Virus record (IMG/VR): IMGVR_UViG_3300005289_000052
Location: 1 to 64,000 of that record
DNA length: 64,000 nt
Strand: one strand, 5' to 3'
Shown piece after piece: positions 595 through 61,948 of the stretch (its first letter is position 1; each line of letters starts with the position of its first letter). The notes below the pieces were generated by a model, which was not told where the DNA came from, ran no database searches, and saw nothing but the letters and a program-made list of their open reading frames with translations. The translations under genes and the position numbers were made by a program.

Positions 595-624
595 GGAGAG
601 GGGGCAACCCCTCTCCTTTCTTTT
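595..624 (+). terminator. Intrinsic terminator
   Basis: GGAGAGGGG-GCAA-CCCCTCTCC followed by TTTCTTTT. Confidence 0.85.
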
Positions 625-635
625 GAGGTCAGTCT

Positions 636-2603
636 ATGGCTACCGCCACACAGATTAAAGACACAGACTGGATCAGACAATCGTTTATGTTGCCCCGAAA
701 GGCCATTGCGAATGCGGACTCGATTCGACGCACGTTAACCGATGCTCGATTCAAGTTCACAGACACACGCCTGGGTGGTAACTTTGCGATTAACCCTCCT
801 CCCCAGTTCACTCGCTATGCAGACTTGGTGGTTCCGAGTTTGTACAGTGGGTCAACCGGACAGGGTCGCTACTACAGTGAGGCCATTGACGACAACGCAC
901 AATTGATCCATATGCGTTTTGGTGTCCCGGAGTTTAACTCCCTCACTAACTTCTTCTTCAACTTCTACAACCCACAGGCTGCTACCCTTGCACGTACGGG
1001 TCGGGCTAACCCCCTGTCCTTCGCATTGGGTAAGTTGTTCGGTACAGTAATCACCTTGCCTCTCCAGTTGTTAATCACTGGCGGTGCAGCGTTGAGCTTC
1101 TTCTTAGGTCGTCCTACGTCGAAGTACTACTACCTCAAGCCTGCCATGCCATTGTACTGGAACGCAGTGAATACCATCGCCAACGGTATCGCTGTAAACA
1201 TGGGTCTCACCCCACGTACCTTCCAGGACGATGAAAAGAAATCCATGCCGGGTACTTTAGAGAACACGGCAGAAGCGTCGAGAACTTACCACGCATTCAA
1301 CCCAGGCATCTGGCACGAATCAGGTCAGATCGACGTCTATTCGTTGGCAACCAATGCTCAGCGTCTGGCAAACGATCAACGAGCGAAGATGGAGGAGATC
1401 CTTGAGACCCGAGAGTCTCCAGCGGCTATCCGATCAGCCATCTTGCAATACCGTGAGAAACCACAGATCAACGACAGTCGTGTCTTCAAGGACTTTGAGT
1501 CTTACCTGTCAGCCTATCAAGGGTTGAACAAGAAGGACGCAGAGACCGACGACGGTAGTGCCGAGAAGACGGGTGATACACGAACCTATGAGAAGTCGCT
1601 GTTGGACTTTATGGAACGTGAGCACAACGACGGTGGTCAATGGGTCACCTTCAACGTAGAACACACTGGTACCGCAGCAGAGAGCTTCCAAAGTTCTACC
1701 CGTGAGTCAGACATCTCGTCTAAACTTAACGGTCTGTCTGCTACTGGTCGTTCTGCACGTTTCTCCACCGCTGATGGTCAAACTGGTATCAACCCAATCG
1801 ATAGCGTTATGTCGATGGTTGGTAGCTTTATCGACGGTGCATTGGACTCTATTAAGCTGTCAGGCTTGATGGCGTTCTCTGGTATGGCGATTGCTGACAT
1901 TCCAAAGATGTGGGAATCCTCCTCGGCTCAACTGCCACGGATGGACTACACCATTAAGCTGCGGACTCCGTACGGGAACAAGTTCTCTCGGTTCTGTGAC
2001 CTGATGGTTCCACTGTCGATGCTGTTGGCTGCTGCTCTGCCAATCTCCACGGGTAAGCAATCCTACACCGCTCCGTTCCTTTGCGAACTCTACTCCAAAG
2101 GTCGTGCGCAAACACGTCTTGGTATTGTTGAGTCGTTGAGCATCACCCGTGGTACGGGTAACTTGGGTTGGACGCAAGACCAGGAACCTCTGGGTATTGA
2201 CGTGACCTTCTCTGTGGTAGACCTGTCTTCTATCATGCACATGCCAATCAACGCAGGGTTCTCCTTGAACGATGCGGTGGCAACTGGTCTGGGTGTGGGT
2301 ACTGCACTGTTGGGTGGCGGTGGCGTTAAGTCACTGGCTGCTGGTGCGTCGATGATTGCAGGTACTGACTTCGCTAAGGGTGTGTTCTCTGAAGACACCA
2401 TGTTCTCCGACTATCTGGCTATCCTGTCGAGTATGTCTCTCACTGAGCAGACGTACACGTATCAGAAGCTCAGGGTCAACTTGGCGAAACAAATGGGCTC
2501 GATGAATACCTGGTTCTCGAAGTCTCACTTTGCCAACTGGTTCATGAACACCACGCCTGCGCGGTTGTTCTCTGGATTCGCAATTGGTACAGGGCTTGGA
2601 TGA
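636..2603 (+). CDS. Virion tail-tip/baseplate protein, phiKZ gp182-like
   Basis: 655 aa, GAGGT RBS at 625; motifs GGNFAINPPPQFT, LRTPYGN, ESLSITRGTG as recalled for phiKZ-like tail-tip proteins; synteny. Confidence 0.7.
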   Translation: MATATQIKDTDWIRQSFMLPRKAIANADSIRRTLTDARFKFTDTRLGGNFAINPPPQFTRYADLVVPSLYSGSTGQGRYYSEAIDDNAQLIHMRFGVPEFNSLTNFFFNFYNPQAATLARTGRANPLSFALGKLFGTVITLPLQLLITGGAALSFFLGRPTSKYYYLKPAMPLYWNAVNTIANGIAVNMGLTPRTFQDDEKKSMPGTLENTAEASRTYHAFNPGIWHESGQIDVYSLATNAQRLANDQRAKMEEILETRESPAAIRSAILQYREKPQINDSRVFKDFESYLSAYQGLNKKDAETDDGSAEKTGDTRTYEKSLLDFMEREHNDGGQWVTFNVEHTGTAAESFQSSTRESDISSKLNGLSATGRSARFSTADGQTGINPIDSVMSMVGSFIDGALDSIKLSGLMAFSGMAIADIPKMWESSSAQLPRMDYTIKLRTPYGNKFSRFCDLMVPLSMLLAAALPISTGKQSYTAPFLCELYSKGRAQTRLGIVESLSITRGTGNLGWTQDQEPLGIDVTFSVVDLSSIMHMPINAGFSLNDAVATGLGVGTALLGGGGVKSLAAGASMIAGTDFAKGVFSEDTMFSDYLAILSSMSLTEQTYTYQKLRVNLAKQMGSMNTWFSKSHFANWFMNTTPARLFSGFAIGTGLG

Positions 2604-2640
2604 CGGCATAGAGGGAGGCCACCAGGCCTCCCCTTATGCT
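2602..2640. terminator. Bidirectional hairpin between convergent genes, flanked by GCATA/TATGC
   Basis: GACGGCATAGAGGGAGGCC-ACCA-GGCCTCCCCTTATGC. Confidence 0.8.
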
Positions 2641-3647
2641 CAGTCGAACTTGGCCAGTGGATACCACTGTTTTAAGAACGAGGTCAAAGCTGCTGACCGG
2701 TACGTCGGTGCAATCATGATCGGAAGCTTGTAGGCTTCCATGCGACCCAACAACACCACAGCGTGTGTCGAGGCGTACGTGAACATCTCAAGGTTATCCA
2801 CCACAGCACCGTTGCGGGTGTAGTTCGCCCAATTAGGGTCGATGTGGTTTAAGACCTCTAGCAGCTCCGTAGCGCGCTGATCGTACTGAGCCGGTGTGGT
2901 ATTGTCCGCGAACTTGTAAAACATCAGGATACGCTTGCAGGCGTCTGGTAGCGTGCCTAGCACACCCCCTGGCGTCAACGTGTCACCCATCTTCTTCAAA
3001 GCATCGATGTTGCTCGTCAGAACAGCTACTGGGTAGTTGGTTCGGTAGGCGTAGTAACCCACAGACTTGTCACTGGTGGACTTGATTGCTTCATCCAACA
3101 GATCAGTAGCACCAGACCTGATCGCGTAGTCAATGATGGTGGATGCCATCGCTGCTTCTGCTGCCAAGTCAAAGACGTTGAACACATCGGACTTACCAGT
3201 TAACTCTTTAGCCAAACGAGCCAAACCAGTAGCATCATCGAGATTACCCGACATGTACATCTTCACACCAGTCTGGGTAGCCCCCATAATGGAGCTGACT
3301 GTTTCCTTCGACACCCCAAACTTGTCAAAGGTTTCAAACATGGTGTTCTGCATCCCACCAGTTAGGGTCTTGATTAAACCACCCGAACCTAAGGACTTAC
3401 CGATACGCAACAACGCATCAGTCTTAGACAACTTGCCCGACGCAGCATTGGTCACATCTTTAATGATGGACTTCAACGCACCAGGGTTTTTCCTCAATGT
3501 CGCAGCAGCATCGGCACTGAAGTTCTTCAGAATGTCCGGCAACTGGTTGAGGGTAGTGTTCGCTTTCTGTTTGTAGTGGTCAACCGTGAGGAGAGCATCC
3601 ACCGGTCCAGACTTAAACAGGGAAGACGCTACTTTATTCGCAGACAT
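2640..3647 (-). CDS. Hypothetical protein, probably virion structural
   Basis: Long ORF; start moved to MSANK (3647), which has a G-rich RBS; codon usage like neighbours. Confidence 0.6.
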   Translation of the reverse strand: MSANKVASSLFKSGPVDALLTVDHYKQKANTTLNQLPDILKNFSADAAATLRKNPGALKSIIKDVTNAASGKLSKTDALLRIGKSLGSGGLIKTLTGGMQNTMFETFDKFGVSKETVSSIMGATQTGVKMYMSGNLDDATGLARLAKELTGKSDVFNVFDLAAEAAMASTIIDYAIRSGATDLLDEAIKSTSDKSVGYYAYRTNYPVAVLTSNIDALKKMGDTLTPGGVLGTLPDACKRILMFYKFADNTTPAQYDQRATELLEVLNHIDPNWANYTRNGAVVDNLEMFTYASTHAVVLLGRMEAYKLPIMIAPTYRSAALTSFLKQWYPLAKFD

Positions 3648-3666
3648 ACTGAGCCCCCCACGAGAC

Positions 3667-3700
3667 AAAAAAAAAAGAAGGGACCGAAGCCCCTTCTTTT
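3667..3700 (-). terminator. Intrinsic terminator with cUUCGg loop
   Basis: Minus strand GAAGGGGC-TTCG-GTCCCTTC followed by a 10-T run. Confidence 0.85.
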
Positions 3701-3704: not shown

Positions 3705-4226
3705 TTAACGCTTCCTGAGGAATTCACGGATCTCAGTGAGGTCCGTTACTAACCGTCCAGGATTCTTTGGGGCAACGACCTTACAGTTTCCTGAGTCCGG
3801 GTCCCCATAGTAATAGTAGTGCGTTAACGGCTCGCAACTGTCCATGAACAGCTTGAACAACTTAGGGTTTTGTGTCACCTTCGCAAGGAGCCCTAAGCGC
3901 ATGTGGTAATCGAAGTCGTGGTTGAGCACCATGTGGGTACGGCTTAACTCCACACCCCTTCGTTTGGCTTCGATACCCCAGAGAGTTCGAAACTCTTCGA
4001 ATCGCTTTACCTCGCCGGTCGCTTTGTTTTCTTCGCCGACTTTGAGGTAGTAGTGCAATCCTTCTGCCGATTGAAAGTACCCAAGGATCGGATGCTTAAT
4101 CGGTGTCTGTGCAAAGTTGGTGAGCAGTCTCCCCAACTCCGTGCGTCCTTTTGTATAAACGTTACAGTGAGTAACGCCGTCCATCATTGGATTTGGTTCC
4201 ATTACGTTCTCTTTCTGTTTCGGCAT
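3705..4226 (-). CDS. NADAR (YbiA / T4 gp30.3-like) family protein
   Basis: LTNFAQTP..F.SAEG...LK near the N-terminus and AKVTQNPKLFKLFMDS..LTH later parallel the NADAR motifs LSNF..F...E...Q..K and AKF.Q...L...L. Confidence 0.6.
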   Translation of the reverse strand: MPKQKENVMEPNPMMDGVTHCNVYTKGRTELGRLLTNFAQTPIKHPILGYFQSAEGLHYYLKVGEENKATGEVKRFEEFRTLWGIEAKRRGVELSRTHMVLNHDFDYHMRLGLLAKVTQNPKLFKLFMDSCEPLTHYYYYGDPDSGNCKVVAPKNPGRLVTDLTEIREFLRKR

Positions 4227-4253
4227 ACAGCCGCCCACACGGAGCGGCCATAA

Positions 4254-4733
4254 CTACTGCTTATTACCCAAGCTTGGATCGATTGCTTCCAGCGCTCTAA
4301 CCAGACTTTCGACGGTGGGCCCAGCATGCTTCACTGGGATTCGGGATTCATCATCGGCTGGTTGTTCAGCTTCCGACAAATGGATGATGGTAGAGTACTC
4401 GGTCTTAAGACCTGTTCGCCACTCAAACTCTAACGTCATCTTTACACGCAAAGGATTTAGAAATCGCAACGCCTTCTCAAAGACCCCCCACGTCATGGTT
4501 GGGCGCAAGAGTTCCTTAGAAAGGTTCCCTCGGGCTGATGACATGTCGCGTGGGTTCTGTGGGATACGATTTCGTGGGTCCTTCAAATAACGCAACATGT
4601 TCCGGTTCCAAACGTTCTTGTTAAACGTCTGGTCAGCCATGATGCGTCGAAACAACTTACTCAGGGTGCCGCTGGCTTCGTCGACCGCTTTGTTCTTCGA
4701 GTCGAGTATCCGAGTGAGATCCTTGTTTTGCAT
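4254..4733 (-). CDS. Hypothetical protein
   Basis: ORF; start MQNKD has a TGAGG RBS; basic helical N-terminal half. Confidence 0.7.
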   Translation of the reverse strand: MQNKDLTRILDSKNKAVDEASGTLSKLFRRIMADQTFNKNVWNRNMLRYLKDPRNRIPQNPRDMSSARGNLSKELLRPTMTWGVFEKALRFLNPLRVKMTLEFEWRTGLKTEYSTIIHLSEAEQPADDESRIPVKHAGPTVESLVRALEAIDPSLGNKQ

Positions 4734-5734: not shown

Positions 5735-5770
5735 TGCCATAGTATCATCATACTCTGTAATTTCTGACTT

Positions 5771-5808
5771 GGGCATAAGGGGAGGCTCAGGCCTCCCTCT
5801 ATGCTGTC
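5771..5808. terminator. Bidirectional hairpin with GCATA/TATGC flanks
   Basis: GGCATAAGGGGAGGC-TCAG-GCCTCCCTCTATGCTGTC between convergent genes. Confidence 0.8.
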
Positions 5809-10530: not shown

Positions 10531-10563
10531 TTCACTGGAGTAATATGTATCTGAGATTTTTTT
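10531..10563 (-). promoter_or_regulatory. Early promoter-like motif, copy 2
   Basis: Minus strand AAAAAAATCTCAGATACATATTACTCCAGTGAA upstream of five small genes. Confidence 0.7.
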
Positions 10564-10574: not shown

Positions 10575-10611
10575 GACGGCATAAAAGCCTAGGGGTCCGA
10601 AAACCCCTAGG
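10575..10611 (-). terminator. Terminator with trailing TTTTATGCCGTC
   Basis: CCTAGGGG/CCCCTAGG stem, then TTTTATGCCGTC on the minus strand. Confidence 0.8.
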
Positions 10612-13336: not shown

Positions 13337-13338
13337 GC

Positions 13339-13390
13339 GTCATAAAGACTGACTCCCCAGGATCACCTTGGGGAGTCAGTCTGTTATGCT
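13339..13390. terminator. Bidirectional hairpin with CATAA/TTATG flanks
   Basis: AGACTGACTCCCCA/TGGGGAGTCAGTCT 14-bp stem between convergent genes. Confidence 0.85.
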
Positions 13391-13395
13391 GGGAG

Positions 13396-17867: not shown

Positions 17868-17908
17868 GACAGCATAGAGGGAGGCCCAAAGGCCTCCCCT
17901 TATGCCGT
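17868..17908. terminator. Bidirectional hairpin with GCATA/TATGC flanks
   Basis: GACAGCATAGAGGGAGGCC-CAAA-GGCCTCCCCTTATGCCGT. Confidence 0.8.
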
Positions 17909-18436
17909 TCAGATGTTGTATCGGAACACGGTGATCCAGCGACTGTAGGCGATTTCATCCGCAAACAGAAGCTCATGTAACTGCGCCGTAAAGACTTCAT
18001 CAGTAGCATCTTGCAAAGTCCGGGTTAGGAACTTCTCAATATCTTTCCGACGAGCCTCACGACGGTTGTTCTGGATCGGGTACAACACCAGAATGAACTG
18101 GACGGCCAGGGTGGTTTGAATGTCCACAGGGCGTGGATCATCATCACTGAAGGTCCGCATGAAGAGGTCGTGTGCCGTCTCCAGTTGGTTCTTCACTGTT
18201 GCAGGAGTCGGGAACAAAGCCCGGACACCACCCTCGGTGAAGTGATGCAGAAGAGCATTGACCAAGTTGGGCAGAGTGAACGGCTCCAACAGCTTTGCGT
18301 TCACAGCGAACTCGAGATCCTTGTGGGCAAGGAACAAGTCGGCCATCACTCGGCGGTAAGCTTTGTGTTCCCGGACCATTACAGTCCGTTCAACGCGTTC
18401 GTGGAGGAATTCACTCATGAGATCGTAATCTCCCAA
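17909..18436 (-). CDS. Hypothetical protein
   Basis: 175 aa ORF; start may be 18418. Confidence 0.65.
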   Translation of the reverse strand: MGDYDLMSEFLHERVERTVMVREHKAYRRVMADLFLAHKDLEFAVNAKLLEPFTLPNLVNALLHHFTEGGVRALFPTPATVKNQLETAHDLFMRTFSDDDPRPVDIQTTLAVQFILVLYPIQNNRREARRKDIEKFLTRTLQDATDEVFTAQLHELLFADEIAYSRWITVFRYNI

Positions 18437-22988: not shown

Positions 22989-23251
22989 TGGGTGGTATTT
23001 CTCGAGTAGGTGTCAACTCCGCAGGTGGTGTCATCCAGGGGCCAGGAGAACCGACGTTCACCTTAGATGGTGCGGTGGTATCCGTTCTCAACGATGACGT
23101 CGCAGGACACGGCGTAGGCTCTCACGCAGGCCCTAAAATGGTGGAGGGGTCAGCGTGGATGAGTTGGAATGGTGTTCCGGTAGTTCGGGCTGGTAATAAA
23201 GCCTCGTGTGGTCACGAAGCAGACGGACATCCGACGTGGGACATTGAATGA
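22988..23251 (+). CDS. PAAR-like spike tip protein
   Basis: 87 aa; GH...H and NG.PVVRAG....CGH metal-binding pattern; overlaps the spike stop codon. Confidence 0.85.
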   Translation: MGGISRVGVNSAGGVIQGPGEPTFTLDGAVVSVLNDDVAGHGVGSHAGPKMVEGSAWMSWNGVPVVRAGNKASCGHEADGHPTWDIE

Positions 23252-23289
23252 CAGCATAAGGGGAGGCTCTGGGCCTCCCTCTATGCCGG
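23250..23289. terminator. Bidirectional hairpin with GCATA/TATGC flanks
   Basis: GACAGCATAAGGGGAGGC-TCTGG-GCCTCCCTCTATGCCG. Confidence 0.8.
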
Positions 23290-24534
23290 TTACAGGTCTG
23301 AACCAATTTTCAAGAAGTAAGCCTTCGAGTAACGGTTCGGGTAGTGACGATCTTGGGTCGGGTCGATAGAAACCCCTTCGGTCCAGTGAGTGGTCTCGAA
23401 GTTGTACTCAGGACGTCGGTTAGAACTCCCTGCCAGTACGTAGGTGTCGCCTTCACGCACAACCCAATAGGACATCAGCTCACCTTTGTCAATCACCACA
23501 GGCCAGAAAGGACGAGTCTTGGTGAAGTAACGGTCTGGGGTCTTGGAGACTTCCAGTTGCTCACGATCCACATAGATGTCGTTGTTGTTGATCACGACGA
23601 GGAAGGTTTGCGAAAGGGTGAACAGTTTGGTGATGACGTCATTGCTAAAGAACTCTTCCAGAGCAATCTGGTCGTAGTTCCCGTTCTTGATAGTCATCAG
23701 TGGACGAATCGACTCGAGGTTGATTCGCTTCTGTGCATGGAAGTACCACTCGACGAACACTTGGTTACGCAGATCGACAGAGAAGCTTTTCTCACCGATA
23801 CGTTTCAGTGCTCGACCCCAAGGTAGTAAGAAGCCCATAAAGGACAACATCACCGTCTTGTCGCTAAGGTCTTCCTCCACCGTGATGATGGTGTTGATCA
23901 GCAAGGAAGGATCACTACCGCCTGCTGCAATCATCTCAGTAGTAATCGGAATAGTCTTCACACCACCCACTGCTGAGAAGTTCAGGATGCCGACATGGTT
24001 GTCGTTACAGATCCGACCAGTCCTTCCGCCTTCTGGAATGTAGTTGGCTTCTGAGTCGTAGTCCACTCTGTGCAGTAACCCGTTAACTTCAACCAGACAG
24101 TTGTCATGGAAGTCTTTTGGTGACACGCCTTCACGCCACAGACGCAGGTCGTGTGCATCCGAGATCAGGTAGTCGTTACCATAAGCAACCCCTGGTGGCA
24201 CCGGAGCCAAACTGTAACCAGCAGCAATGGCGTCACGGTAGGTCACGTACTTCGGATTGATCTTGGGTACAGTCGTTGAGGTGGGTAGAGACTCATTCCC
24301 CAAACCTGCCAGCCACTGTTTAAGGGTGGTTCCTGGCATCACTTTGGTAATGCGACTGCGGACTTCATTGAGGTCCAAAGACAGGGGTTCTTCGTAGAGA
24401 GGAGAACTCAATACGAGGATTAAGTGGGAGTAGTCCGTCCAGAGTTTGAAGACGTCCATATCCGCCAAGTCTACTTGGGCCCAGCGACCCGTACGACCGC
24501 GCGTTCTGGCCAGCGTATAAAGGAGTGTGTACAT
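23290..24534 (-). CDS. Virion structural protein (phiKZ-like hypothetical)
   Basis: Start moved to MYTLL; ~414 aa; divergent from the fibre genes. Confidence 0.6.
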   Translation of the reverse strand: MYTLLYTLARTRGRTGRWAQVDLADMDVFKLWTDYSHLILVLSSPLYEEPLSLDLNEVRSRITKVMPGTTLKQWLAGLGNESLPTSTTVPKINPKYVTYRDAIAAGYSLAPVPPGVAYGNDYLISDAHDLRLWREGVSPKDFHDNCLVEVNGLLHRVDYDSEANYIPEGGRTGRICNDNHVGILNFSAVGGVKTIPITTEMIAAGGSDPSLLINTIITVEEDLSDKTVMLSFMGFLLPWGRALKRIGEKSFSVDLRNQVFVEWYFHAQKRINLESIRPLMTIKNGNYDQIALEEFFSNDVITKLFTLSQTFLVVINNNDIYVDREQLEVSKTPDRYFTKTRPFWPVVIDKGELMSYWVVREGDTYVLAGSSNRRPEYNFETTHWTEGVSIDPTQDRHYPNRYSKAYFLKIGSDL

Positions 24535-36741: not shown

Positions 36742-36774
36742 GCCGGTGGATAAAACCACCGGCTTTGTGCCGTC
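36742..36774 (+). terminator. Intra-operon hairpin followed by variant motif TTTGTGCCGTC
   Basis: GCCGGTGG-ATAAAA-CCACCGGC-TTTGTGCCGTC. Confidence 0.6.
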
Positions 36775-43388: not shown

Positions 43389-43421
43389 AGGGGAGGGCTT
43401 CGGCCCTCCTTTTATGCCGTC
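43389..43421 (+). terminator. Operon-ending terminator with trailing TTTTATGCCGTC
   Basis: GGAGGGC-TTCG-GCCCTCC-TTTTATGCCGTC. Confidence 0.88.
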
Positions 43422-44146: not shown

Positions 44147-45706
44147 ATGGGTGCATTAGCGAGTTACTTCCCTGCGATGGAGGAGGTCGAACAAGACTTC
44201 CTTAACGCCGGGTTACTGGTAGAAAGTCGTGTTGCTTCGGAACGTGCTGACGATGACGTAACTGAACTGGGCGAGATCCATGCTACCTTAGAAGCTTTGG
44301 CTGTTTCGATGGAAGCAACTCTGGAGGCCGATCCTTGGACTCCTGTCTTCATCAATCACGCACTAGATTCCTTCGGTCGCCGCACTGGCTTGAAGCTCCC
44401 TGTGGCGTCGTTGGAAGATGCTACTGTCACCATTTCGATGGAGAGCATTGGTGGCGCTATCAAGGCCATCTGGGATGCCATCGTCAAGGCAGTGAAAGCA
44501 GCTCTTAAAGCGGTGGCTGACTTCTTCCGTCGGATCTATGAACTGGTTGCTGGTAAGCGCAAGAAGATCGAAGCAGGTTTTGCTAAGGCCAAGAAAGAAG
44601 GTGACTCCACGCCTTCCAAGCTGGCTGACACCAACAACCTGTCGAAGGTCGCTGACGCAGAGATCGAAGCTTTCAAGAAGAAGCTCAAGACCCCTGAGTT
44701 GGTTAAGTGTCGCAAAGACCAATTGGTTGCACTGACTCCAGCGGCAGCCACAGTGATCGACCGGGCTAACATCTTGGATGGCAACCAAACCATCCCTAGA
44801 GAAGAGATCACCCACGGTGGTGAGGTCATCACCCTGGTGCGCCGTGAAGACGTCAAGCGCGCCAAATACGTCAAGCTCTGCCAAGCAGGTAATGACTTCA
44901 TCGCTCACGCCAGTGTTGCCGGTATCTCGTTGGCTGGTCTGAAAGAGCATCGCTGTGAGATCAGTATCGCTGACGTTACCGAAGTGGTCTGGGAGTGTCT
45001 GTACCGAGGTAAAGAGATCCGCGAAGTAGGTAACAACACTTCGACAGCGGTTCAGGAAATCTCGAGACTGGCTATTGCAAAGCTGAAAGGATACTTCGCT
45101 AAGGATCGCAAGAACAATCCTGGCGACTTCCATTTCAGTAGCCAAAGCGACGCTATGAATGCTGAGGTGTTGGCCAAATTCGAAGCGATTCGCAACGAGT
45201 TCAAAAGGATCACCGGTAAGGATGGTTGGATTCCTGCTGGTCGACGTGTGGTTAAGTTCCTGGAACCCAAGAACGTTTATCACTTGTTCCCTGAGTCCAA
45301 TGCGATGCCCGAGCTTGCCAAGTTCACCGAGAACGAAGTCTTGCTGAACATCCCAACTTGGTCTGAAGCCAAGAAGGCCTCTGATGGTGTAACCTCGCTG
45401 TTGATCCTCAACACGCAGAAGGACATCATCACCGTCATCAACATCGGCTTTGACCGAGCGTTGGATGAATGGAACGCAGCCATCAAGTGGGTTGGTGAAC
45501 AAGGGTATGGCGACAAGACCCCAGTAGTCACCAAGTACTTCACGGACTACTGCAAGCTGTTCTTCACTGATATCCAAACTCAGTACAACCGTTTCCTGCG
45601 CTCACAACTGGCAATGGAAGGTACGGCGATTCAATGGGCTAACGTTCTGTCTGGCACCATGGCTCGTTTGGCTGATGCCAAATCTCTCGTTGAGGAAATT
45701 GCTTAA
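44147..45706 (+). CDS. Inner-head/ejection protein (phiKZ gp93/gp162 paralog-family-like)
   Basis: Acidic propeptide with SMEA, SLED, SMES, then amphipathic IKAIWDAIVKAVKAALKAVADFF. Confidence 0.72.
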   Translation: MGALASYFPAMEEVEQDFLNAGLLVESRVASERADDDVTELGEIHATLEALAVSMEATLEADPWTPVFINHALDSFGRRTGLKLPVASLEDATVTISMESIGGAIKAIWDAIVKAVKAALKAVADFFRRIYELVAGKRKKIEAGFAKAKKEGDSTPSKLADTNNLSKVADAEIEAFKKKLKTPELVKCRKDQLVALTPAAATVIDRANILDGNQTIPREEITHGGEVITLVRREDVKRAKYVKLCQAGNDFIAHASVAGISLAGLKEHRCEISIADVTEVVWECLYRGKEIREVGNNTSTAVQEISRLAIAKLKGYFAKDRKNNPGDFHFSSQSDAMNAEVLAKFEAIRNEFKRITGKDGWIPAGRRVVKFLEPKNVYHLFPESNAMPELAKFTENEVLLNIPTWSEAKKASDGVTSLLILNTQKDIITVINIGFDRALDEWNAAIKWVGEQGYGDKTPVVTKYFTDYCKLFFTDIQTQYNRFLRSQLAMEGTAIQWANVLSGTMARLADAKSLVEEIA

Positions 45707-45745
45707 CGGCATAAAGGGAGGGCCGAAGCCCTCCCGTTTATGCCC
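45706..45745. terminator. Bidirectional hairpin with GGCATAA/TTATGCC flanks
   Basis: ACGGCATAAA-GGGAGGGC-CGAA-GCCCTCCC-GTTTATGCCC. Confidence 0.85.
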
Positions 45746-46148
45746 CTGAACTTCCGAGGAGCATCTTGACGAATTCCCATCCAGCCGAGAATACGCCACT
45801 AAGCGTCTCTTTATCCCAGGTCCCGAGTTCGGTATCCCAAGAAGTGATTACACCAATCACCACCATGGCCAACCCACTCACGACACCAACTGTTTTGAGT
45901 ACGTTCCCCCCACGGGATGAGCTTGATTCAACCCCTTCTAAGTTACCGATGTCCATGGTCAGGATAGCGATTTGGACAGCGTCTTCCATCGCTACGATCT
46001 TCTCCATAACCCCTGAACCTGTATCGGTCAAAGCGACTTGTTTATCCTGAGGCAAGTGGAAGTTGCAGATCTGTGCAACCATACTGCCCCATGAATAGGT
46101 TCCAAGGGTTTGATTCCCGATGGTCCCCAGAGCACCTCCGATGTTCAT
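45738..46148 (-). CDS. Holin candidate (membrane protein)
   Basis: Start MNIGG; C-terminal hydrophobic helices; directly after the spanin pair. Confidence 0.45.
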   Translation of the reverse strand: MNIGGALGTIGNQTLGTYSWGSMVAQICNFHLPQDKQVALTDTGSGVMEKIVAMEDAVQIAILTMDIGNLEGVESSSSRGGNVLKTVGVVSGLAMVVIGVITSWDTELGTWDKETLSGVFSAGWEFVKMLLGSSGA

Positions 46149-48246: not shown

Positions 48247-48308
48247 AGATGAGTTCCTGTGGATAGTTGCTAGGCCAAGCGTACGTAAGCCAATACACAA
48301 TATACGGC

Positions 48309-48334
48309 GGCATAGCGGGCTCCCGAAGGAGCCC
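48309..48334 (-). terminator. Hairpin with TATGCC on the minus strand
   Basis: GGGCTCC-CGAA-GGAGCCC preceded by GGCATAG on +. Confidence 0.6.
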
Positions 48335-53169: not shown

Positions 53170-56043
53170 ATGGGCCCTAACTATGACGCCAACCAGATGC
53201 AGATGCTGGGGCTGGACAGTCAAAAACGGCGTTTCGAAAAACTCGGGTTGTTCAAGAAACGTCCGTTGGCAACCGCTGTCGTAAGTAAGCTGGTGCGGTC
53301 CGGTACTGATGTACTGGACATCAACACCGGTCAGAACAATCGTGGCGGTGCAGACATGCCCACGTCGAGTTACCTGAACAAGGTCTCGGACACTACCGCT
53401 GGAAACGTCACTGATGCTGCCAACCTGTACCAGATGTTGCCGGATACAGAACTGGCCGAGCAGATCCTGGTTAGTAGTATCCTGTCTCCGAAAGACATGG
53501 TTACCACGGAACTGAACTACCTCTGCAATGAATCCTCTTTGAAAGGGGAAATCACAGGGGTCTTGCTGTCAGTGGTCGAAGAGTTTTTCACCAAAGTCTA
53601 TAAAATAGATCCCCAACTGAAGACGATTCTCTCGGACGTTCTGTTCAAGAAAGGGTCGTACCCAGTCCTGATCATTCCTGAGTCCTCAGTTGATGAAATC
53701 ATCAACGGCGACAAACCGGGAACTGGTCTGGAATCCCTCAGCGGGAAAGGCTCGGATCTGTTCAACTACAGTATTGGTATCCTGGGTGACTCCAGCTTCG
53801 AGAACGGCAAGAAGGTTCCTCGTGCTCGTCAAAGTCTTTCTATGGAAGACATGAACCAGTACTACACGCAGAATTTCAGGATGCTGCGTCCCCGCCTTAA
53901 GAAAGGTAGCTTCGATACCAAGATCACGGTCTCGGACAACCCTGACGTTCTCAAGGCACCGTTTGCTCACGAACTGCAACGTCGCCAACATCTGGCTAAC
54001 ACGTTCCGTAGTCGTGGCTTCGGTATGGAATCGCAGAACGAAGTTTCACGTGACGATATCCAGATGTCGTTCTACCGCCCACGGACCAACCCAATGCGTC
54101 CTGTGGTAGCGATGAAGACCAAGGACCAGCTTAAGCGTGCTACGGTGGGTCACCCACTGGTCATGCGTCTGCCCTCGGAGTCGATCATTCCGGTACACGT
54201 TCCTGGTTCGCCAGAAGAACACATCGGCTACTTCGTAATCCTCGACCAGACTGGTAACCCAGTCGTGAAGGCCAACCGTTCAGAGTACTACAACGACCTG
54301 AACATGAACATGACGATTAACAAGGACATGGCGTCCCAGTTGATCTCACAAGGCCAACGTACAGTCGAAGGGTATCAACAACGTTCTGACGTGGACACCG
54401 AGGAAGCGACTCGGATCTACGCACAGCTCGTAGAAGAAGACCTGATCGCTCGTCTGCGTAACGGTATCTACGCTGACAACATCGAGATCTCACGTCCTCT
54501 GGAAGTGTATCGCATCATGCTGGCGCGTACCTTTGCCAACATGTCCACTCAGTTGCTGTTCGTACCGGCTGAATTGGTAACTTACTTTGCCTTCGACTAC
54601 AACCGTTGGGGCGTAGGTAAGTCGCTGCTGGAAGACAACAAAATCCTGGCTTCCCTGCGAGTCATGATGATGCTGTCTAACACCATGGCTGCCGTGAAGA
54701 ACTCTGTTCCTCACACCGGTCTGAACATTACCCTGGACCCGACTGACCCTGATCCGTCTGGTACTGTGGAGAAACTGGTTCACAACTACACGCAGACACG
54801 TCAAGCTTCGTACCCGTTGGGTGCGTCGAGTCCTGTGGACATCGTGAACTTCCTCCAGAACGCAGGCGTTGACCTTCATGTAACTGGTTCTCCGGCTTAC
54901 CCGGAAACCCGCATGGAAGTTGAAGACCGTCAACGTTCGGTAGCCAAGCCAGACACTGACCTCGAAGACAACCTCAAGAAGCAATTCTTGATGTCGCTGG
55001 GTCTGTCGCCTGAAACGGTGGACAATGGTTACAACGTTGAGTTCGCAGCTTCGATCGTGACCTCTAACCTGTTGCTGACCAAACGAGTGATGCTCTACCA
55101 AGATCTCTTCACTGAGCTGTTGGGTGAGTTCATTCGCAAGTACGTGTTCAACTCCGGTAACCTGCTCGACAAATTGCGCAAGGCTATTGAAGCCAACCGT
55201 AAACTGATCGAAGTAGACGACGGGGAAGAAGCACCAGAGACCGAAGCGATCCTGATGGAATTCGTTAACTCGATCGCGGTGTCCTTGCCACGTCCTGACT
55301 CGATCACTATCGAACGTCAGATGGAAGCCTACGACAAGTACGTAGAAGCACTCGAGAAGTGCCTCGACGCTTACTTCTCCAGCGACTTCCTGGACGGTAC
55401 TGCGATGGGTGAACAGCAGGAGTCTGTGGATGTTGTGAAAGCAGCTATCCTTGCGCACTTCAAGCGTAAGTGGATGCGTGAGAACAACATGCTCCCAGAG
55501 CTGGCAGACTTGGCCACGTTCACCGAAGACGAACACCCGATGATTGATCTGCTCACTGAGCACACTCAACACATCGACGCTATTGGCGCCAGTATCCAAG
55601 GGTACATGGTCAAAGTAGCAGAAGCCCAAGACGCTCGCAACAAACTCACCGAAGCAGTAGAAGCCGACAAACACATTGAAGTAGGTGGCGGTGGTGGTGG
55701 TGATTACAGCTCAGACGACTCCAGTGGAGACGACGACATGGGCGGCGATGATGATGGGATGGGTGACGACGAGTTCGGCGGGGACGAGTTCGACATGGAT
55801 GGTGACTCAGGTGGCGATGACACCGGAGACGATACCTCTGATGACGAGTCTCTCGAAGTAGATGACGCGGATGCTGCTGACGCTGCTGATGCAGGCGGTG
55901 ACGGTAGTAACGATAATGGTGGGGATACCGATGAGGATATCGGTGAAGAGGGTTCGCCTGACACTAGTGGTAGCACTGGTACTCTGGCAGAATTCTTAGA
56001 GTCCACTAAGCGTAATCGTCGCGACAACGAAAACCCGGCATAA
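53170..56043 (+). CDS. Portal protein (phiKZ gp129-like) with an acidic C-terminal tail
   Basis: QMLPD.ELA.QILVSSILSP, KLP.ES.IPVH.P, YFAFDY, GKSLLE; ~957 aa; GGAG RBS. Confidence 0.8.
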   Translation: MGPNYDANQMQMLGLDSQKRRFEKLGLFKKRPLATAVVSKLVRSGTDVLDINTGQNNRGGADMPTSSYLNKVSDTTAGNVTDAANLYQMLPDTELAEQILVSSILSPKDMVTTELNYLCNESSLKGEITGVLLSVVEEFFTKVYKIDPQLKTILSDVLFKKGSYPVLIIPESSVDEIINGDKPGTGLESLSGKGSDLFNYSIGILGDSSFENGKKVPRARQSLSMEDMNQYYTQNFRMLRPRLKKGSFDTKITVSDNPDVLKAPFAHELQRRQHLANTFRSRGFGMESQNEVSRDDIQMSFYRPRTNPMRPVVAMKTKDQLKRATVGHPLVMRLPSESIIPVHVPGSPEEHIGYFVILDQTGNPVVKANRSEYYNDLNMNMTINKDMASQLISQGQRTVEGYQQRSDVDTEEATRIYAQLVEEDLIARLRNGIYADNIEISRPLEVYRIMLARTFANMSTQLLFVPAELVTYFAFDYNRWGVGKSLLEDNKILASLRVMMMLSNTMAAVKNSVPHTGLNITLDPTDPDPSGTVEKLVHNYTQTRQASYPLGASSPVDIVNFLQNAGVDLHVTGSPAYPETRMEVEDRQRSVAKPDTDLEDNLKKQFLMSLGLSPETVDNGYNVEFAASIVTSNLLLTKRVMLYQDLFTELLGEFIRKYVFNSGNLLDKLRKAIEANRKLIEVDDGEEAPETEAILMEFVNSIAVSLPRPDSITIERQMEAYDKYVEALEKCLDAYFSSDFLDGTAMGEQQESVDVVKAAILAHFKRKWMRENNMLPELADLATFTEDEHPMIDLLTEHTQHIDAIGASIQGYMVKVAEAQDARNKLTEAVEADKHIEVGGGGGGDYSSDDSSGDDDMGGDDDGMGDDEFGGDEFDMDGDSGGDDTGDDTSDDESLEVDDADAADAADAGGDGSNDNGGDTDEDIGEEGSPDTSGSTGTLAEFLESTKRNRRDNENPA

Positions 56044-56091
56044 AAAAGCCAAAAAAAAGAGCCGGGGGAAACCCTGGCTCTTTATGCCGTC
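56036..56091. terminator. Bidirectional terminator with CGGCATAA / TTATGCCGTC flanks
   Basis: AAAGAGCCGGG/CCTGGCTCTTT stem, A-runs, motif on both sides. Confidence 0.85.
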
Positions 56092-56530
56092 AGTGAACGA
56101 CCCGTATGTCAGTAGCGCGACAGAACGCAGCCTGAGCATCACGAACAGCGTCTGCACCGCCATTGAAGCGTAGGATGCAGGTGTCTTTGATCATGTAGCC
56201 ATCGATTGCATCGGTGTTGATGGTTGCACGCACCGCACGTGCTGTTTCAGCCACGATCGGGTTGCCAGGGGTACCAACCCCGTACAGGACCATGTACAGA
56301 TCGTTGGTGTGGAATTGGTGGTCACGCATCGTAACGACGTAACCGTATTGGGTCTCGGCTTGCTTCTCACCAGTAGAGACCTTCTGGATTTCGAAGTTAC
56401 CGTGAACGACATCGCCTTTGAGCTGACGGCCATCGAGTACATCAATGAGGGTCACCAGTTCATCGAGATCTTTCCCATGATCCCAGTTTTCCCACGGGGT
56501 ATTCTTGAACATCAGGATAGTCAAAGACAT
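56090..56530 (-). CDS. Hypothetical protein
   Basis: Start MSLTI with GAAGG RBS. Confidence 0.65.
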   Translation of the reverse strand: MSLTILMFKNTPWENWDHGKDLDELVTLIDVLDGRQLKGDVVHGNFEIQKVSTGEKQAETQYGYVVTMRDHQFHTNDLYMVLYGVGTPGNPIVAETARAVRATINTDAIDGYMIKDTCILRFNGGADAVRDAQAAFCRATDIRVVH

Positions 56531-56557
56531 ATCGAACCTTCTTAGGCTTTTAGTTGA

Positions 56558-56592
56558 GGGCATAGTGGGAGCCCGAAGGCCCCCACTGTTGC
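56558..56592 (-). terminator. Hairpin after the 754-aa gene
   Basis: GCATAGTGGG..GCC-CGAA-GGC..CCCACTGTTGC. Confidence 0.6.
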
Positions 56593-56593
56593 T

Positions 56594-58858: not shown

Positions 58859-58874
58859 CTTGGAGTAACTCCAC

Positions 58875-60536
58875 CTAAGCGTATTTCGTAAATTGGATTC
58901 GTCGTTGTACGTTGTCGATCAAAGCACGGAACTTCTCGTTCCTCACGACACGATAGGAATCATCGTATTGAACGTAAGGCGAAATGCGGGTACGCCCACT
59001 CGGGCTCGCCTTAGGCAGGTTGTTATAACTGCCTACTTCAACAATCGACGAGTGCAACAATTTGGACGCATCTCCAGCAGAAGACTTCCCGCTGTTGCGA
59101 CCGTTACCAGTAGCGCTGGTCTGTGGGACCAGGTTCGACGTGATCTTGAAGTACAGGTTATCTCCAGGACTGGAAACGCCTGCGACCTCGCCATGCTGCC
59201 GGTTGATTTTCATGATCGCATCTACAGTCAGATTCCGCCGTAGTGCATTGTTGATTTCCTCTTTAACTTTTGGTTTCCGTACCGCCTTTTGCAAAGCGAA
59301 TTTGAAGTGAGAAATCGCCTTGTTGATATCGAACAAAGCGTAACGCAATACCATCAACTCCTTGTCGTACATCGTGGACTCGACGTTGTCCGACTGGATG
59401 ACCATCTCTGAAAGCGCTCCAATGATGAACGCGAACAGTTGGTAAATGTCATTTGCGTGGATATTCTCACTGAGAAGGTCAAGCCGCGATCGTTCGTCCA
59501 GGGATTCGTCCAAAGACTCGATGTGGTTGTCAATCTCGTCTGCCAGCTTACCTTCGCTTTGACCTGGGCCAAAGATCAGGTGGCCGAGCAGGATGCGCCA
59601 GAATCGGGTGCTCTCAATGAACTCGGGTTCCACACGTTGCGGGAAATGATCCGTCACGTAGAAGAACCCTGCCACCAAACCGATGTTCTGCGTAGTCCAA
59701 GCCGTACGGCGAATTGCTAAGCGGATATTCGTTGGAATGTACCCGCTACGTCTAACGCCCCGAAGAGAGCGTGGGCAGATCTGCTTAGAGCCACAGATCA
59801 ACCATTCTTCCTTCGGGTAGATGTCGTAGTTGATTTCGTCGGGATAACCAACGAATACATCAGTGTTCGACATCATCTTAAACGCCTGGCTTACCCCATA
59901 CTTGCTGAAGAGGTAGTGCGCCATCGTGTGTTTCGCTGTGATGCGATTTCTGTTTCCAGTTCCCTGCGCAGGGTTTCGATTATAGACCGTGGCCCATGCC
60001 ACGTTCGCCGTCTCGTTCCAACTGGTCTCCAGGTTTCCCTCGTCGAGATCATAAATACGGAACGTGTGATCCAATCGCTCGAAGGTAAGTTTCGTTACCT
60101 GGAGTGGAATAAAGATCGTGTTTACCCCGTAGCTGATTGCACGGTCGGCCAGCACTGGGCTGATCGAGAACGTACTGCCACGGATCGTGATCAAACCTGC
60201 CTGGGTCATGTAAGGCAAGTACATATGCGGTTCGTACATAGGTTCCCCATTGTACGTGAACCGATACTTCATCAAGAACAGATTGTTCCGCGCGATGTCG
60301 AACACCGGCTTCCCGCTCCGCTTTGGCGTGACCACGTTGTACTCTTCCTGAGGTGTACAGCGTGTGCATCCTTCGTACCGCAACCCTGGTGGGAAGCTCT
60401 TTGAGATACTTCTGAACAACCCATCCACGTGACGCTCAACAACCCGCATTTGCTCTACGGCGAGGCCTCTCATGACCTTTTCATTCATACGGGGAATGGC
60501 ATTATGGTGAATCATGCCAAAGAGGTGGTTATCCAT
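58875..60536 (-). CDS. rpoB: Non-virion RNA polymerase beta subunit, N-terminal half (phiKZ gp123-like)
   Basis: YLPY....G.ITIRGS.F.ISPVL; HSS..EVGSY.NLPK..PSG..RISPY parallels beta H.SHYGR.CP.ETPE..G; synteny after capsid. Confidence 0.82.
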   Translation of the reverse strand: MDNHLFGMIHHNAIPRMNEKVMRGLAVEQMRVVERHVDGLFRSISKSFPPGLRYEGCTRCTPQEEYNVVTPKRSGKPVFDIARNNLFLMKYRFTYNGEPMYEPHMYLPYMTQAGLITIRGSTFSISPVLADRAISYGVNTIFIPLQVTKLTFERLDHTFRIYDLDEGNLETSWNETANVAWATVYNRNPAQGTGNRNRITAKHTMAHYLFSKYGVSQAFKMMSNTDVFVGYPDEINYDIYPKEEWLICGSKQICPRSLRGVRRSGYIPTNIRLAIRRTAWTTQNIGLVAGFFYVTDHFPQRVEPEFIESTRFWRILLGHLIFGPGQSEGKLADEIDNHIESLDESLDERSRLDLLSENIHANDIYQLFAFIIGALSEMVIQSDNVESTMYDKELMVLRYALFDINKAISHFKFALQKAVRKPKVKEEINNALRRNLTVDAIMKINRQHGEVAGVSSPGDNLYFKITSNLVPQTSATGNGRNSGKSSAGDASKLLHSSIVEVGSYNNLPKASPSGRTRISPYVQYDDSYRVVRNEKFRALIDNVQRRIQFTKYA

Positions 60537-61738: not shown

Positions 61739-61801
61739 AGTTTCACACTGAGAAAGGGATAGCATTTGTAGATTTGTGTGAATGGCATTCCTCTGTGATT
61801 G

Positions 61802-61834
61802 TACACTTTGATAATATACACTTGAAATGACTTT
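61802..61834 (-). promoter_or_regulatory. Early promoter-like motif, copy 3
   Basis: Minus strand AAAGTCATTTCAAGTGTATATTATCAAAGTGTA; ~24/33 match to copy 1; lies upstream of the nvRNAP beta operon. Confidence 0.6.
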
Positions 61835-61839
61835 GAATA

Positions 61840-61948
61840 GACGGCATAAAAAGAAGGAAGTCCTCCTGAGCCCGAAAGCCCAGGAGGTTTCCTTTTGAGT
61901 CCCCACTTAAAGGACACTCCTCAGGAGCCGAAGCCCCTAAGGAGGTGT
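61840..61948 (-). terminator. Tandem terminators after the major capsid gene, ending TTTTTATGCCGTC
   Basis: Two CGAA(A)-looped hairpins (about 61853-61896 and 61914-61948). Confidence 0.75.

What the first reader, a model, noticed from the sequence alone, without database searches (positions are those of the whole stretch)
595..61852. Conserved TTATGC(C/T)GTC motif fused to the 3' side of most terminator hairpins
At least 12 hairpins carry this motif, or a close partial/variant, right after the stem or a short T-run on the terminated strand: 2602, 5771, 10575, 13339, 17868, 23250, 36742 (TTTGTGCCGTC), 43389, 45706, 48309, 56036, 61840. Hairpins between convergent genes carry it on both sides (GCATA...TATGC), and several lack a normal U-tract. 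In some genes the complement forms the final Ala-stop codons (GCA TAA at 587, 45738, 56038). phiKZ late promoters contain TATG at the start site, so this could be a sequence-specific termination signal for a phage RNAP (like T7 class II), a terminator-promoter junction, or an RNA processing or protein-binding site.
Basis: partly seen in the sequence, partly recalled or inferred. Interest (0 to 1): 0.6.

Follow-up and report, generated by a model that had tools for sequence, protein, structure and literature searches.

The report
phiKZ-type terminator tail motif
The repeated YTTATGCCGTC word is real and sits just after the RNA hairpins that end genes in this giant phiKZ-like phage, but the same hairpin-plus-TTATKYYGT terminator has already been published for phages phiKZ and 201phi2-1, so this is a new example of a known signal whose mechanism is still untested.

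Summary
The window is the first 64 kb of a 243.7-kb phiKZ-like jumbo phage genome from IMG/VR.

- **Enrichment:** TATGC is the most enriched 5-mer in the 3' flanks of the genome's 54 perfect GC-rich hairpins (46 of them intergenic): 42 seen against 0.5 expected.
- **Strand:** it lies on the strand whose gene has just ended (39 of 63 such flanks against 4 of 29 others, p=1e-5).
- **Not a promoter:** 28 of 43 copies point into a convergent gene, and none sits in a promoter-only context.
- **The hairpins act as RNA:** UUCG loops occur 14:0 on the terminated strand.
- **Selection:** in two collinear relatives the stems drift with compensatory changes, while TATG is identical at 40/40 and 25/25 orthologous sites.

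It is the conserved intrinsic-terminator motif that ONT-cappable-seq mapped at phiKZ transcript 3' ends (hairpin + TTATKYYGT, Putzeys 2024) and that recurs in 201phi2-1. I also find it in Xanthomonas phage RTH11 and Ralstonia phage RP12, more weakly in Goslar and EL, and not in SPN3US.

It is not T7 class II-like (it depends on a hairpin) and not a terminator-promoter junction. How the tail works is unknown. The most novel surviving idea is that the RNA polymerase pocket that reads the late-promoter TATG also reads the terminator TATG as a pause signal.

The parts
583..616 (.). Hairpin 595-616 (9-bp stem, GCAA loop). The motif copy TTATGCCTTC lies at 583-592 on the minus strand, and its complement supplies the GCA TAA end of the plus gene 2..592. 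The plus-side tail is T-rich.
2602..2643 (.). Two-way terminator between convergent genes 636..2603(+) and 2640..3668(-). Hairpin 2613-2632; CTATGCCGTC at 2602-2611 (-); CTTATGCTCA at 2633-2642 (+).
5768..5808 (.). Two-way terminator. Hairpin 5780-5797; CTATGCTGTC at 5799-5808 (+); TTATGCCCA at 5770-5778 (-). The minus copy ends the early operon driven from the promoter at 10547.
10575..10611 (-). One-way terminator. Hairpin 10588-10611, tail TTATGCCGTC at 10575-10584. A separate early promoter follows about 30 nt downstream.
10540..10547 (-). Core (CATATTAC) of a phiKZ-type early promoter inside a longer conserved consensus. This is context, not part of the motif.
13337..13392 (.). Two-way terminator with a 14-bp stem (13346-13382). 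Tails are TTATGCTGG at 13384-13392 (+) and the variant TTATGACGC at 13337-13345 (-).
17868..17909 (.). Two-way terminator. Hairpin 17879-17898; CTATGCTGTC at 17868-17877 (-); TTATGCCGTT at 17900-17909 (+).
23250..23290 (.). Two-way terminator. Hairpin 23261-23279; TTATGCTGTC at 23250-23259 (-); CTATGCCGG at 23281-23289 (+). In the relatives the stem is replaced outright while the flanking GCATA/TATGC words are kept.
36742..36774 (+). One-way terminator with a variant tail, TTGTGCCGTC, at 36765-36774. The whole element (hairpin plus tail) is missing as a unit in relative G002.
43392..43421 (+). One-way terminator. Hairpin 43392-43409 (UUCG loop), tail TTATGCCGTC at 43412-43421. Relative G001 has an unrelated stem at this site but the same tail.
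45705..45746 (.). Two-way terminator. Hairpin 45716-45735; TTATGCCGTT at 45705-45714 (-); TTATGCCCC at 45738-45746 (+). The complement of the plus copy gives the GCA TAA end of the minus gene.
48306..48334 (-). One-way terminator. Hairpin 48317-48334 (UUCG on the minus strand), tail CTATGCCGC at 48307-48315.
56034..56091 (.). Two-way terminator. Imperfect hairpin 56056-56083; TTATGCCGTC at 56082-56091 (+). On the minus strand a T8 run, then GGC, then a T-run ending in ATGCCGG (56035-56055).
56555..56587 (-). Hairpin 56564-56587 (UUCG loop) with tail CTATGCCCT at 56557-56565, after the gp124-like gene.
61840..61896 (-). Terminator after the major head protein gene. Long imperfect hairpin at about 61853-61896, then TTTT and TTATGCCGTC at 61840-61849. 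An early promoter core follows at 61811-61818.
58875..60536 (-). Homologue of phiKZ GP123, the beta-like subunit of the non-virion RNA polymerase whose pocket binds the non-template TATG of late promoters. It is a candidate reader of the motif, not part of it.

Best explanation
These are the intrinsic (hairpin-dependent) transcription terminators of a phiKZ-like jumbo phage, and the motif is their conserved 3' tail.

**Anatomy.** Each element has three parts:
- a GC-rich RNA hairpin, often closed by a UUCG tetraloop;
- usually two pyrimidines after the stem;
- then TATGC, often extended to TATGCCGTCA.

The element marks the 3' end of the transcription unit on the strand that carries the tail. 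Between convergent genes the tail is present on both sides, which gives a two-way terminator and the GCATA...TATGC symmetry. When a gene ends close to the hairpin, the complement of the tail supplies its stop codon (TTA to TAA, TCA to TGA). That is a by-product of tight packing.

**Shown here:** the association with hairpins, the strand and orientation, the RNA-level hairpin, purifying selection on TATGC, and the match to the published phiKZ motif.

**Taken from the literature:** transcript 3' ends map at this motif in phiKZ and 201phi2-1.

**Inferred.** The short U-rich YUUAU stretch stands in for the usual long U-tract. The U-then-G step followed by GC-rich downstream DNA makes the phage's multisubunit polymerases pause 5-8 nt past the stem, so the hairpin can release the transcript. 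Units driven by early promoters and late (structural-gene) units both use it, so both phage polymerases, or a feature they share, must respond to it.
For: 1. **Unbiased enrichment.** TATGC is the top 5-mer in hairpin 3' flanks (42 observed, 0.51 expected).
2. **Strand.** TATGC is on 39 of 63 flanks that follow a co-oriented gene end, against 4 of 29 other flanks (Fisher p=1.4e-5).
3. **Orientation.** Of 43 copies, 28 face a convergent gene, 11 precede a co-oriented gene and 0 are in a promoter-only context. Five are followed by a separate early promoter.
4. **RNA-level hairpin.** In 27 one-way terminators the loop contains UUCG on the terminated strand in 14 cases and on the other strand in 0.
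5. **Fixed spacing.** There are 2 nt between stem and TATGC in 19 of 43 copies, and -1 to 4 nt in 39 of 43.
6. **Selection.** In two collinear relatives, TATG is identical at 40/40 and 25/25 orthologous sites. The next C is 97% and 96% identical. Background is about 85%. Stems are 89-90% identical, with 21 and 14 compensatory pairs, and are sometimes swapped outright.
7. **Published match.** In phiKZ, 61 terminators defined by ONT-cappable-seq 3' ends share a hairpin followed by TTATKYYGT (PMC10914365). A similar motif A occurs in 59 terminators of 201phi2-1 (PMC11512511).
8. **Seen in other phages with my own scan.** The same word tops the flanks in RTH11, RP12, 201phi2-1 and phiKZ.
9. **Family.** The genome encodes homologues of phiKZ gp123, gp55, PhuZ, the major head protein and the sheath. 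Sigma-70-like promoters are depleted (6 against 13.8 expected).
Against: - No RNA data exist for this phage, so no 3' end has been seen here.
- 24 of 63 terminated flanks lack TATGC, so it is not obligatory.
- 4 copies lie only on the non-terminated strand.
- SPN3US and AR9 use TTATT or T-runs instead.
- 201phi2-1 terminators also work with host polymerase in a reporter assay, so the tail may not be specific to the phage polymerases.
- The role of the tail has never been tested by mutation.
- Positions beyond TATGCC are only weakly more conserved than background between orthologues.
- Gene calls are my own codon-model calls, not curated ones.
Confidence: 0.8

Rival explanations
1. The tail is a binding or processing signal read after transcription. 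A phage-encoded or host RNA-binding protein or nuclease would recognise the hairpin plus UAUGCCGUC, to set or protect the mature 3' end or to mark mRNAs for handling such as export from the phage nucleus. The mapped 3' ends would then be processed ends.
For: - The signal is strand-specific and lies next to an RNA-level hairpin.
- Sequence, not structure, is conserved in the tail.
- It is present on both early and late units, which suits a factor common to all transcripts.
- On four strands the tail follows a full T8 run and is displaced about 11 nt from the stem, so it is kept even where a canonical U-tract is present.
Against: - No candidate factor was identified here.
- The published work classes these elements as intrinsic terminators, and eight 201phi2-1 terminators (intrinsic and factor-dependent classes, with various motifs) terminate in uninfected host cells.
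- The tight 2-nt spacing to the stem is what a polymerase-coupled event would predict.
Confidence: 0.12
2. Terminator-promoter junction. The TATG of the tail would be a late-promoter start site (G at +1) for the non-virion polymerase, so that transcription restarts immediately after each hairpin.
For: - phiKZ late promoters need TATG, with the G as the start site (PMC4666361).
- 11 copies do precede a co-oriented gene.
- The GP123 pocket residues are largely kept in this phage.
Against: - 28 of 43 copies point into a convergent gene and none is in a promoter-only context such as a divergent intergenic region.
- Five of the 11 co-oriented cases have their own early promoter downstream.
- phiKZ P119L lies in a divergent region with no hairpin and continues TAGAC rather than YYGT.
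- A separate TATGTAGAC sits 6 nt after the tail at 43427-43435.
Confidence: 0.05
3. A dispersed palindromic repeat kept for DNA-level reasons. It could be a recombination or module-shuffling cassette like the stem-loop cassettes of T4-type phages, or the site of a dimeric DNA-binding protein.
For: - About ten copies share nearly the same stem (GGGAGGCC type) as well as both flanks.
- One element is present or absent as a unit between relatives (36742).
- Terminator plus early-promoter pairs recur.
Against: - One-way copies carry the word only on the 3' side of the transcribed strand.
- The stems vary freely and co-vary.
- The UUCG strand bias of 14:0 is an RNA property.
- The genomes are collinear, and I saw no rearrangement breakpoints at the elements.
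Confidence: 0.03

Closest known systems
Conserved intrinsic terminator motif of phiKZ (Putzeys et al. 2024, microLife, PMC10914365) and motif A of 201phi2-1 (Microb Biotechnol 2024, PMC11512511)
   Same: A GC-rich hairpin is followed at once by a pyrimidine and TTATKYYGT. The window's TTATGCCGT fits that consensus letter for letter. The motif occurs dozens of times per genome, two-way versions lie between convergent genes, and the phages share the same family with two multisubunit polymerases.
   Different: Here the tail is sharper and more GC-rich (TATGCCGTCA, against TTATGTT-type in phiKZ). The genome has 52% GC against 37%. The phage is an uncultivated IMG/VR genome, with proteins 25-37% identical to their phiKZ homologues in the seven I compared. 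No transcript ends have been mapped for it.
Canonical bacterial intrinsic (Rho-independent) terminator
   Same: A GC-rich hairpin close after the stop codon and a U-containing stretch right after the stem. Some copies have A-tract/T-tract symmetry for two-way action.
   Different: There are only 2-3 U before an A. 37 of 39 motif-bearing flanks have no run of 5 T. A specific non-U sequence (GCCGTC) follows. A standard hairpin-plus-T scan does not pick these elements up and is not enriched over shuffles (21 against 16.9).
T7 class II (PTH-type) pause/termination signal
   Same: A short, specific sequence associated with the end of transcription by a phage-encoded polymerase.
   Different: The T7 signal works without a hairpin, on a single-subunit polymerase, and has an unrelated sequence. 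Here the word is tied to hairpins (31 of 34 copies) and the polymerases are multisubunit.
Non-template-strand reading that boosts weak intrinsic terminators (Bacillus subtilis NusG and TTNTTT; eLife 2021, PMC8060035, seen; mechanism details from my own knowledge)
   Same: It gives a precedent for a sequence in the transcription bubble, read by the elongation machinery, that causes a pause and helps hairpin-dependent termination where the U-tract is poor.
   Different: It uses a different reader (NusG) and a different sequence. For this phage such reading is only a hypothesis.
phiKZ late promoter TATG (Yakunina 2015, PMC4666361; GP123 pocket, IUCrJ 2026, PMC12809450)
   Same: It shares the tetranucleotide TATG, and this phage encodes the GP123 homologue.
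   Different: Promoter TATG copies sit upstream of late genes without a hairpin and show no conserved downstream sequence. The terminator copies follow gene ends and continue CYGT.

Membership tests
phiKZ-type conserved intrinsic terminator | GC-rich stem-loop immediately followed by Y-TTATKYYGT | tested here: met
   TTATGCCGT and TTATGCTGT fit the published consensus. 31 of 34 TATGCYGT copies follow a stable upstream fold, and the spacing mode is 2 nt.
phiKZ-type conserved intrinsic terminator | Located at the 3' end of transcription units on the transcribed strand, with two-way versions between convergent genes | tested here: met
   39 of 63 against 4 of 29 flanks (p=1.4e-5). 17 of 18 convergent-gene hairpins carry it on one or both sides.
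phiKZ-type conserved intrinsic terminator | Transcript 3' ends map at the motif | not testable with these tools
   No RNA run holds this genome. The evidence exists only for phiKZ and 201phi2-1, in the literature.
phiKZ-type conserved intrinsic terminator | Host genome is a phiKZ-like phage with its own multisubunit RNA polymerases | tested here: met
   Homologues of gp123 (33% identity over 542 aa, same gene order) and gp55 (32%), plus PhuZ, the head protein and the sheath. There are 14 phiKZ-type early promoters.
Canonical intrinsic terminator | U-tract of about 7-8 nt, mostly U, directly after the stem | tested here: not met
   37 of 39 motif-bearing terminated flanks have no run of 5 T. 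The consensus scan misses them.
T7 class II terminator | Acts without an RNA hairpin | tested here: not met
   Only 3 of 34 full copies lack a stable upstream fold, and those lie in or next to my predicted coding regions, about what chance gives.
phiKZ late promoter | TATG placed upstream of a co-oriented (late) gene, with the start at G | tested here: not met
   28 of 43 copies face a convergent gene and 0 are in a promoter-only context. The start sites themselves could not be tested.
Dispersed palindromic repeat / stem-loop shuffling cassette | Sequence-conserved palindrome that is symmetric on both strands, whatever the direction of transcription | tested here: not met
   One-way copies carry the tail on the 3' side only. 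The stems vary and co-vary.

The most novel reading that the evidence does not exclude
[quoted passage not shown] That pocket lies in the GP123 homologue, encoded in this window at 58875-60536. It would give a core-enzyme, sequence-specific pause with U at the RNA 3' end and G incoming, 5-6 nt past the stem, and this pause would stand in for a long U-tract. One four-letter word would then serve as both start and stop signal, depending on whether a hairpin precedes it.

**Consistent with this:**
- TATG is 100% conserved at orthologous sites.
- The spacing to the stem is fixed.
- 9 of 16 pocket residues are identical and 2 more are aromatic-for-aromatic swaps, against 33% overall identity.
- TATG/CATA is among the most under-represented tetramers in many phages of the family.

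**Against it:**
- Early units, presumably read by the virion polymerase, carry the motif too.
- SPN3US and EL tails lack the G.
- 201phi2-1 terminators work with host polymerase.
- The idea does not explain the conserved CYGT that follows TATG.
Probability: 0.15. Interest if true: 0.75.

Novelty: new member of a known kind. Interest (0 to 1): 0.3.

Why it matters
For annotation, the motif gives a near-deterministic marker of transcription-unit ends in this uncultivated phage and its relatives. Standard terminator finders miss these elements.

More broadly, a sequence-specific tail conserved across phiKZ-like phages from 37% to 58% GC points to something about how their unusual sigma-less, split-subunit RNA polymerases stop. 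Nobody has tested that, although recombinant phiKZ non-virion polymerase and its structures are available.

The finding itself re-discovers a published motif, so its value lies in the extra constraints worked out here:
- which positions are under selection;
- the fixed spacing to the stem;
- its use by both early and late units;
- its distribution across the family.

Tried and rejected
- **RNA evidence.** One search for sequencing runs found only DNA or metagenome holders and no RNA run.
- **Close relatives in GenBank phages.** Megablast found nothing. tblastn gave only distant jumbo phages.
- **Rfam.** No family matched in the window.
- **Supplementary tables with exact 3'-end coordinates** for phiKZ and 201phi2-1 are not held. 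The position of the RNA 3' end relative to TATG could therefore not be read.
- **Sense against antisense depletion of TATG and TATGC inside genes.** Both strands are depleted relative to Markov and synonymous-shuffle expectations, so there is no strand-specific avoidance to interpret.
- **A late-promoter consensus for this phage.** I tried k-mer enrichment upstream of genes and listed every upstream TATG. Only the early promoter stands out.
- **Post-stop folding with RNAfold.** It merges the tail into extended stems wherever the complement is present, so its tail classes undercount the motif. I used it only to find imperfect hairpins.
- **The idea that the tail is merely the stop codon of the convergent gene.** Rejected, because one-way terminators with no opposing gene carry the full TATGCCGTC (10583, 43413, 61848, 135039).
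- **First gene calls.** Longest-ORF calls were wrong in places and were replaced by codon-model calls.


Full report
**What the window is.** The window is the first 64 kb of a single 243,669-bp contig, which is an IMG/VR virus record with about 52% GC. Megablast finds no close GenBank phage. Protein searches find only jumbo phages of the phiKZ kind, at 37-46% identity among the top hits (Xanthomonas RTH11 and LucasX, Ralstonia RP12, Goslar).

The genome encodes homologues of several phiKZ proteins: gp123 (33% over 542 aa, in the same gene order after the major head protein), gp55, PhuZ tubulin, the major head protein and the tail sheath. It also carries 14 copies of a phiKZ-type early promoter with a [TC]ATATTA[CT] core inside a longer consensus, all on the minus strand. 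Sigma-70-like promoters are depleted (6 against 13.8 expected in 20 kb). So this is a phiKZ-like phage that presumably transcribes with its own virion and non-virion multisubunit polymerases.

To avoid circularity I also started from hairpins. The genome has 54 perfect hairpins (stem of at least 7 bp with at least 5 G/C), of which 46 are intergenic. The most enriched 5-mer in their 3' flanks is TATGC, with 42 observed against 0.51 expected, followed by TTATG.

In the window all 11 perfect intergenic hairpins carry TATGC or, once, TGTGC. The consensus is YYTATGCCGTCA. The gap between stem and TATGC is 2 nt in 19 of 43 copies and -1 to 4 nt in 39 of 43.

**Which strand, and promoter or terminator?** I called genes with an iterated codon-usage model.
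- TATGC lies on 39 of 63 hairpin flanks that follow the end of a co-oriented gene, and on 4 of 29 other flanks (Fisher p=1.4e-5).
- Of the 43 copies, 28 point into a convergent gene, 11 precede a co-oriented gene, and none sits where only a promoter would make sense.
- Of 18 hairpins between convergent genes, 10 carry it on both sides and 7 on one side. Four of those 7 have a T-run on the other side.
- Five copies are followed within about 30 nt by a separate early promoter (10547, 61818, 135000, 156985, 225595).
- The phiKZ late promoter P119L, by contrast, lies in a divergent intergenic region with no hairpin and continues TAGAC after TATG.

There is also an independent check of the strand assignment. 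In 27 one-way terminators the loop contains UUCG on the terminated strand 14 times and on the opposite strand never. That is an RNA-level property.

**Evolutionary test.** Two IMG/VR relatives are collinear with this genome: G001 and G002, whose copies of one test protein are 90% and 61% identical to the window's, with DNA identity of about 67-95% around the terminators. At orthologous terminators:
- TATG is identical in 40 of 40 (G002) and 25 of 25 (G001) sites;
- the following C is 97% and 96% identical, and the next base 93% and 96%;
- identity then falls to the local background of about 85%;
- stems are 89-90% identical, with 21 and 14 compensatory pair changes.

At several sites (43392, 23261, 48317) the stem is replaced outright while the tail stays. 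The element at 36742 is absent as a unit in G002. So the stem is under structural selection and the tail core under sequence selection.

**Comparison with what is known.** Putzeys et al. 2024 (PMC10914365, section 18) mapped 133 phiKZ termination regions by ONT-cappable-seq. They report that 61 predicted intrinsic terminators share a conserved stem-loop followed by TTATKYYGT. The window's TTATGCCGT fits that tail exactly. The 201phi2-1 study (PMC11512511) finds a similar motif A in 59 of 132 terminators and 15 two-way terminators. It also shows that eight terminators work in uninfected Pseudomonas chlororaphis.

My own scan of whole genomes confirms and extends this:
- TTATG or TATGC tops the hairpin flanks in RTH11 (52-fold), RP12 (29-fold), 201phi2-1 (23-fold) and phiKZ (15-fold).
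- The enrichment is weaker in Goslar and EL (8-fold).
- SPN3US and AR9 have TTATT or T-runs instead.

The finding is therefore a new instance of a published motif. Here it is in a sharper, more GC-rich form, shared with the Xanthomonas and Ralstonia phages.

**Mechanism.**
- *Shown:* a hairpin that acts as RNA; a tail placed at a fixed short distance on the transcribed strand; and use after both early-promoter-driven units (7-8 of 14 end in a TATGC-type tail) and structural-gene units.
- *Inferred:* YUUAU serves as a minimal U-tract. The U-to-G step followed by GC-rich DNA makes the polymerase pause 5-8 nt beyond the stem, where hairpin-driven release normally happens.
- *A related detail:* where a long T-run is used instead, it is usually followed by GC as well (7 of 10 by my reading).

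**A more speculative link.** It comes from the 2026 structure of the phiKZ non-virion polymerase (PMC12809450). The beta-like subunit GP123 binds the non-template TATG of late promoters (-3 to +1) in a pocket under the beta-lobe. The window encodes the GP123 homologue. Of the 16 residues named for that pocket, 9 are identical and 2 are aromatic-for-aromatic swaps, against 33% identity overall. TATG/CATA is also the third most under-represented tetramer in this genome, G002, phiKZ, SPN3US and Goslar. It ranks 5th in EL, 9th in 201phi2-1, 18th-20th in AR9, RTH11 and RP12, and 43rd in a 50-kb T4 control.

This fits the idea that TATG is a polymerase signal to be avoided elsewhere, and it allows that the same pocket causes a pause at terminator TATGs. 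Four things count against it: the motif on early units, the TTATT tails of SPN3US, the function of 201phi2-1 terminators with host polymerase, and the unexplained CYGT. I give it about 0.15.

**Rivals.**
- *An RNA-binding or processing signal* is not excluded (0.12). The tail is kept even where it is displaced behind a full T8 run (56035-56055, and outside the window near 147953 and 222464).
- *A terminator-promoter junction* is unlikely (0.05) on orientation grounds.
- *A DNA-level palindromic repeat* is unlikely (0.03) because the one-way copies are asymmetric and the UUCG bias is strand-specific.

**Limits.** There are no transcript data for this phage. The published coordinate tables are not held. 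Gene calls are my own. The hairpin set requires perfect stems and so undercounts. The tetramer control outside the family is a single 50-kb stretch.

**Verdict.** It is a new member of a known kind, of modest interest in itself, with an open and testable question about how phiKZ-type polymerases read the tail.

Noticed in passing
window 10540-10547 (-) and 61811-61818 (-); 12 more outside the window (67921 to 225595): There are 14 intergenic copies of a phiKZ-type early promoter: a [TC]ATATTA[CT] core with conserved AAATCTCA upstream and AGTG downstream. All lie on the minus strand. Five sit directly after a hairpin plus tail.
   Followed up: partly
window 43427-43435 (+): TATGTAGAC lies 6 nt after the terminator tail and 33 nt before the start codon at 43460. 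It is identical to the nine bases at the start site of the phiKZ late promoter P119L, and it is conserved in relatives G001 and G002. It is a candidate late promoter. The chance of such a match among about 100 upstream TATGs is roughly 0.1.
   Followed up: partly
whole genome and 10 other phage genomes: TATG/CATA is the third most under-represented tetramer (maximal-order Markov) in this genome, G002, phiKZ, SPN3US and Goslar. It ranks 5th in EL, 9th in 201phi2-1, 18th-20th in AR9, RTH11 and RP12, and 43rd of 136 in a 50-kb T4 control.
   Followed up: partly
window 36742-36774 compared with G002 near 54069: The whole terminator element (hairpin plus variant tail, about 33 nt) is present here and in G001 but absent as a unit in G002.
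   Followed up: partly
genome-wide one-way terminators, e.g. window 43392-43409, 48317-48334, 56564-56587: UUCG tetraloops dominate. 14 of 27 loops contain UUCG on the terminated strand and none does on the opposite strand.
   Followed up: yes
window 56035-56055 (-); outside the window near 84528, 91785, 147953, 154674, 203017, 222464: In the subclass with a long T-run (T7 to T10), the run is usually followed by GC (7 of 10 by my reading). In the window copy and two others a TATGCCG tail follows about 11 nt further on, so both signals are stacked on one strand.
   Followed up: partly
window 40000-59999: Sigma-70-like promoter matches are fewer than in shuffles (6 against 13.8, sd 3.9). This fits a phage that does not rely on host polymerase.
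   Followed up: no
G000:C1 192882-197588 (outside the window): A cluster of 13 tRNA genes, all on the minus strand (aragorn). It explains two of the apparent non-coding gaps in my gene calls. Two further gaps of 2.0 kb and 3.5 kb (236681-238692 and 238835-242335) remain unexplained.
   Followed up: no
window 4220-4250 (-): A hairpin followed by GTATGCCGA lies inside a 431-nt stretch (4226-4657) with no confidently called gene. It may be another variant terminator.
   Followed up: no
window gene content: PHROG matches include:
- major head protein (62007-64187, -);
- UvsX-like recombinase (11007-12407, -);
- SbcC-like nuclease subunit (19674-22136, -);
- virion structural proteins (27169-30141 and 53149-56043, +).

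The 519-aa protein at 44147-45706 has no PHROG family.
   Followed up: partly
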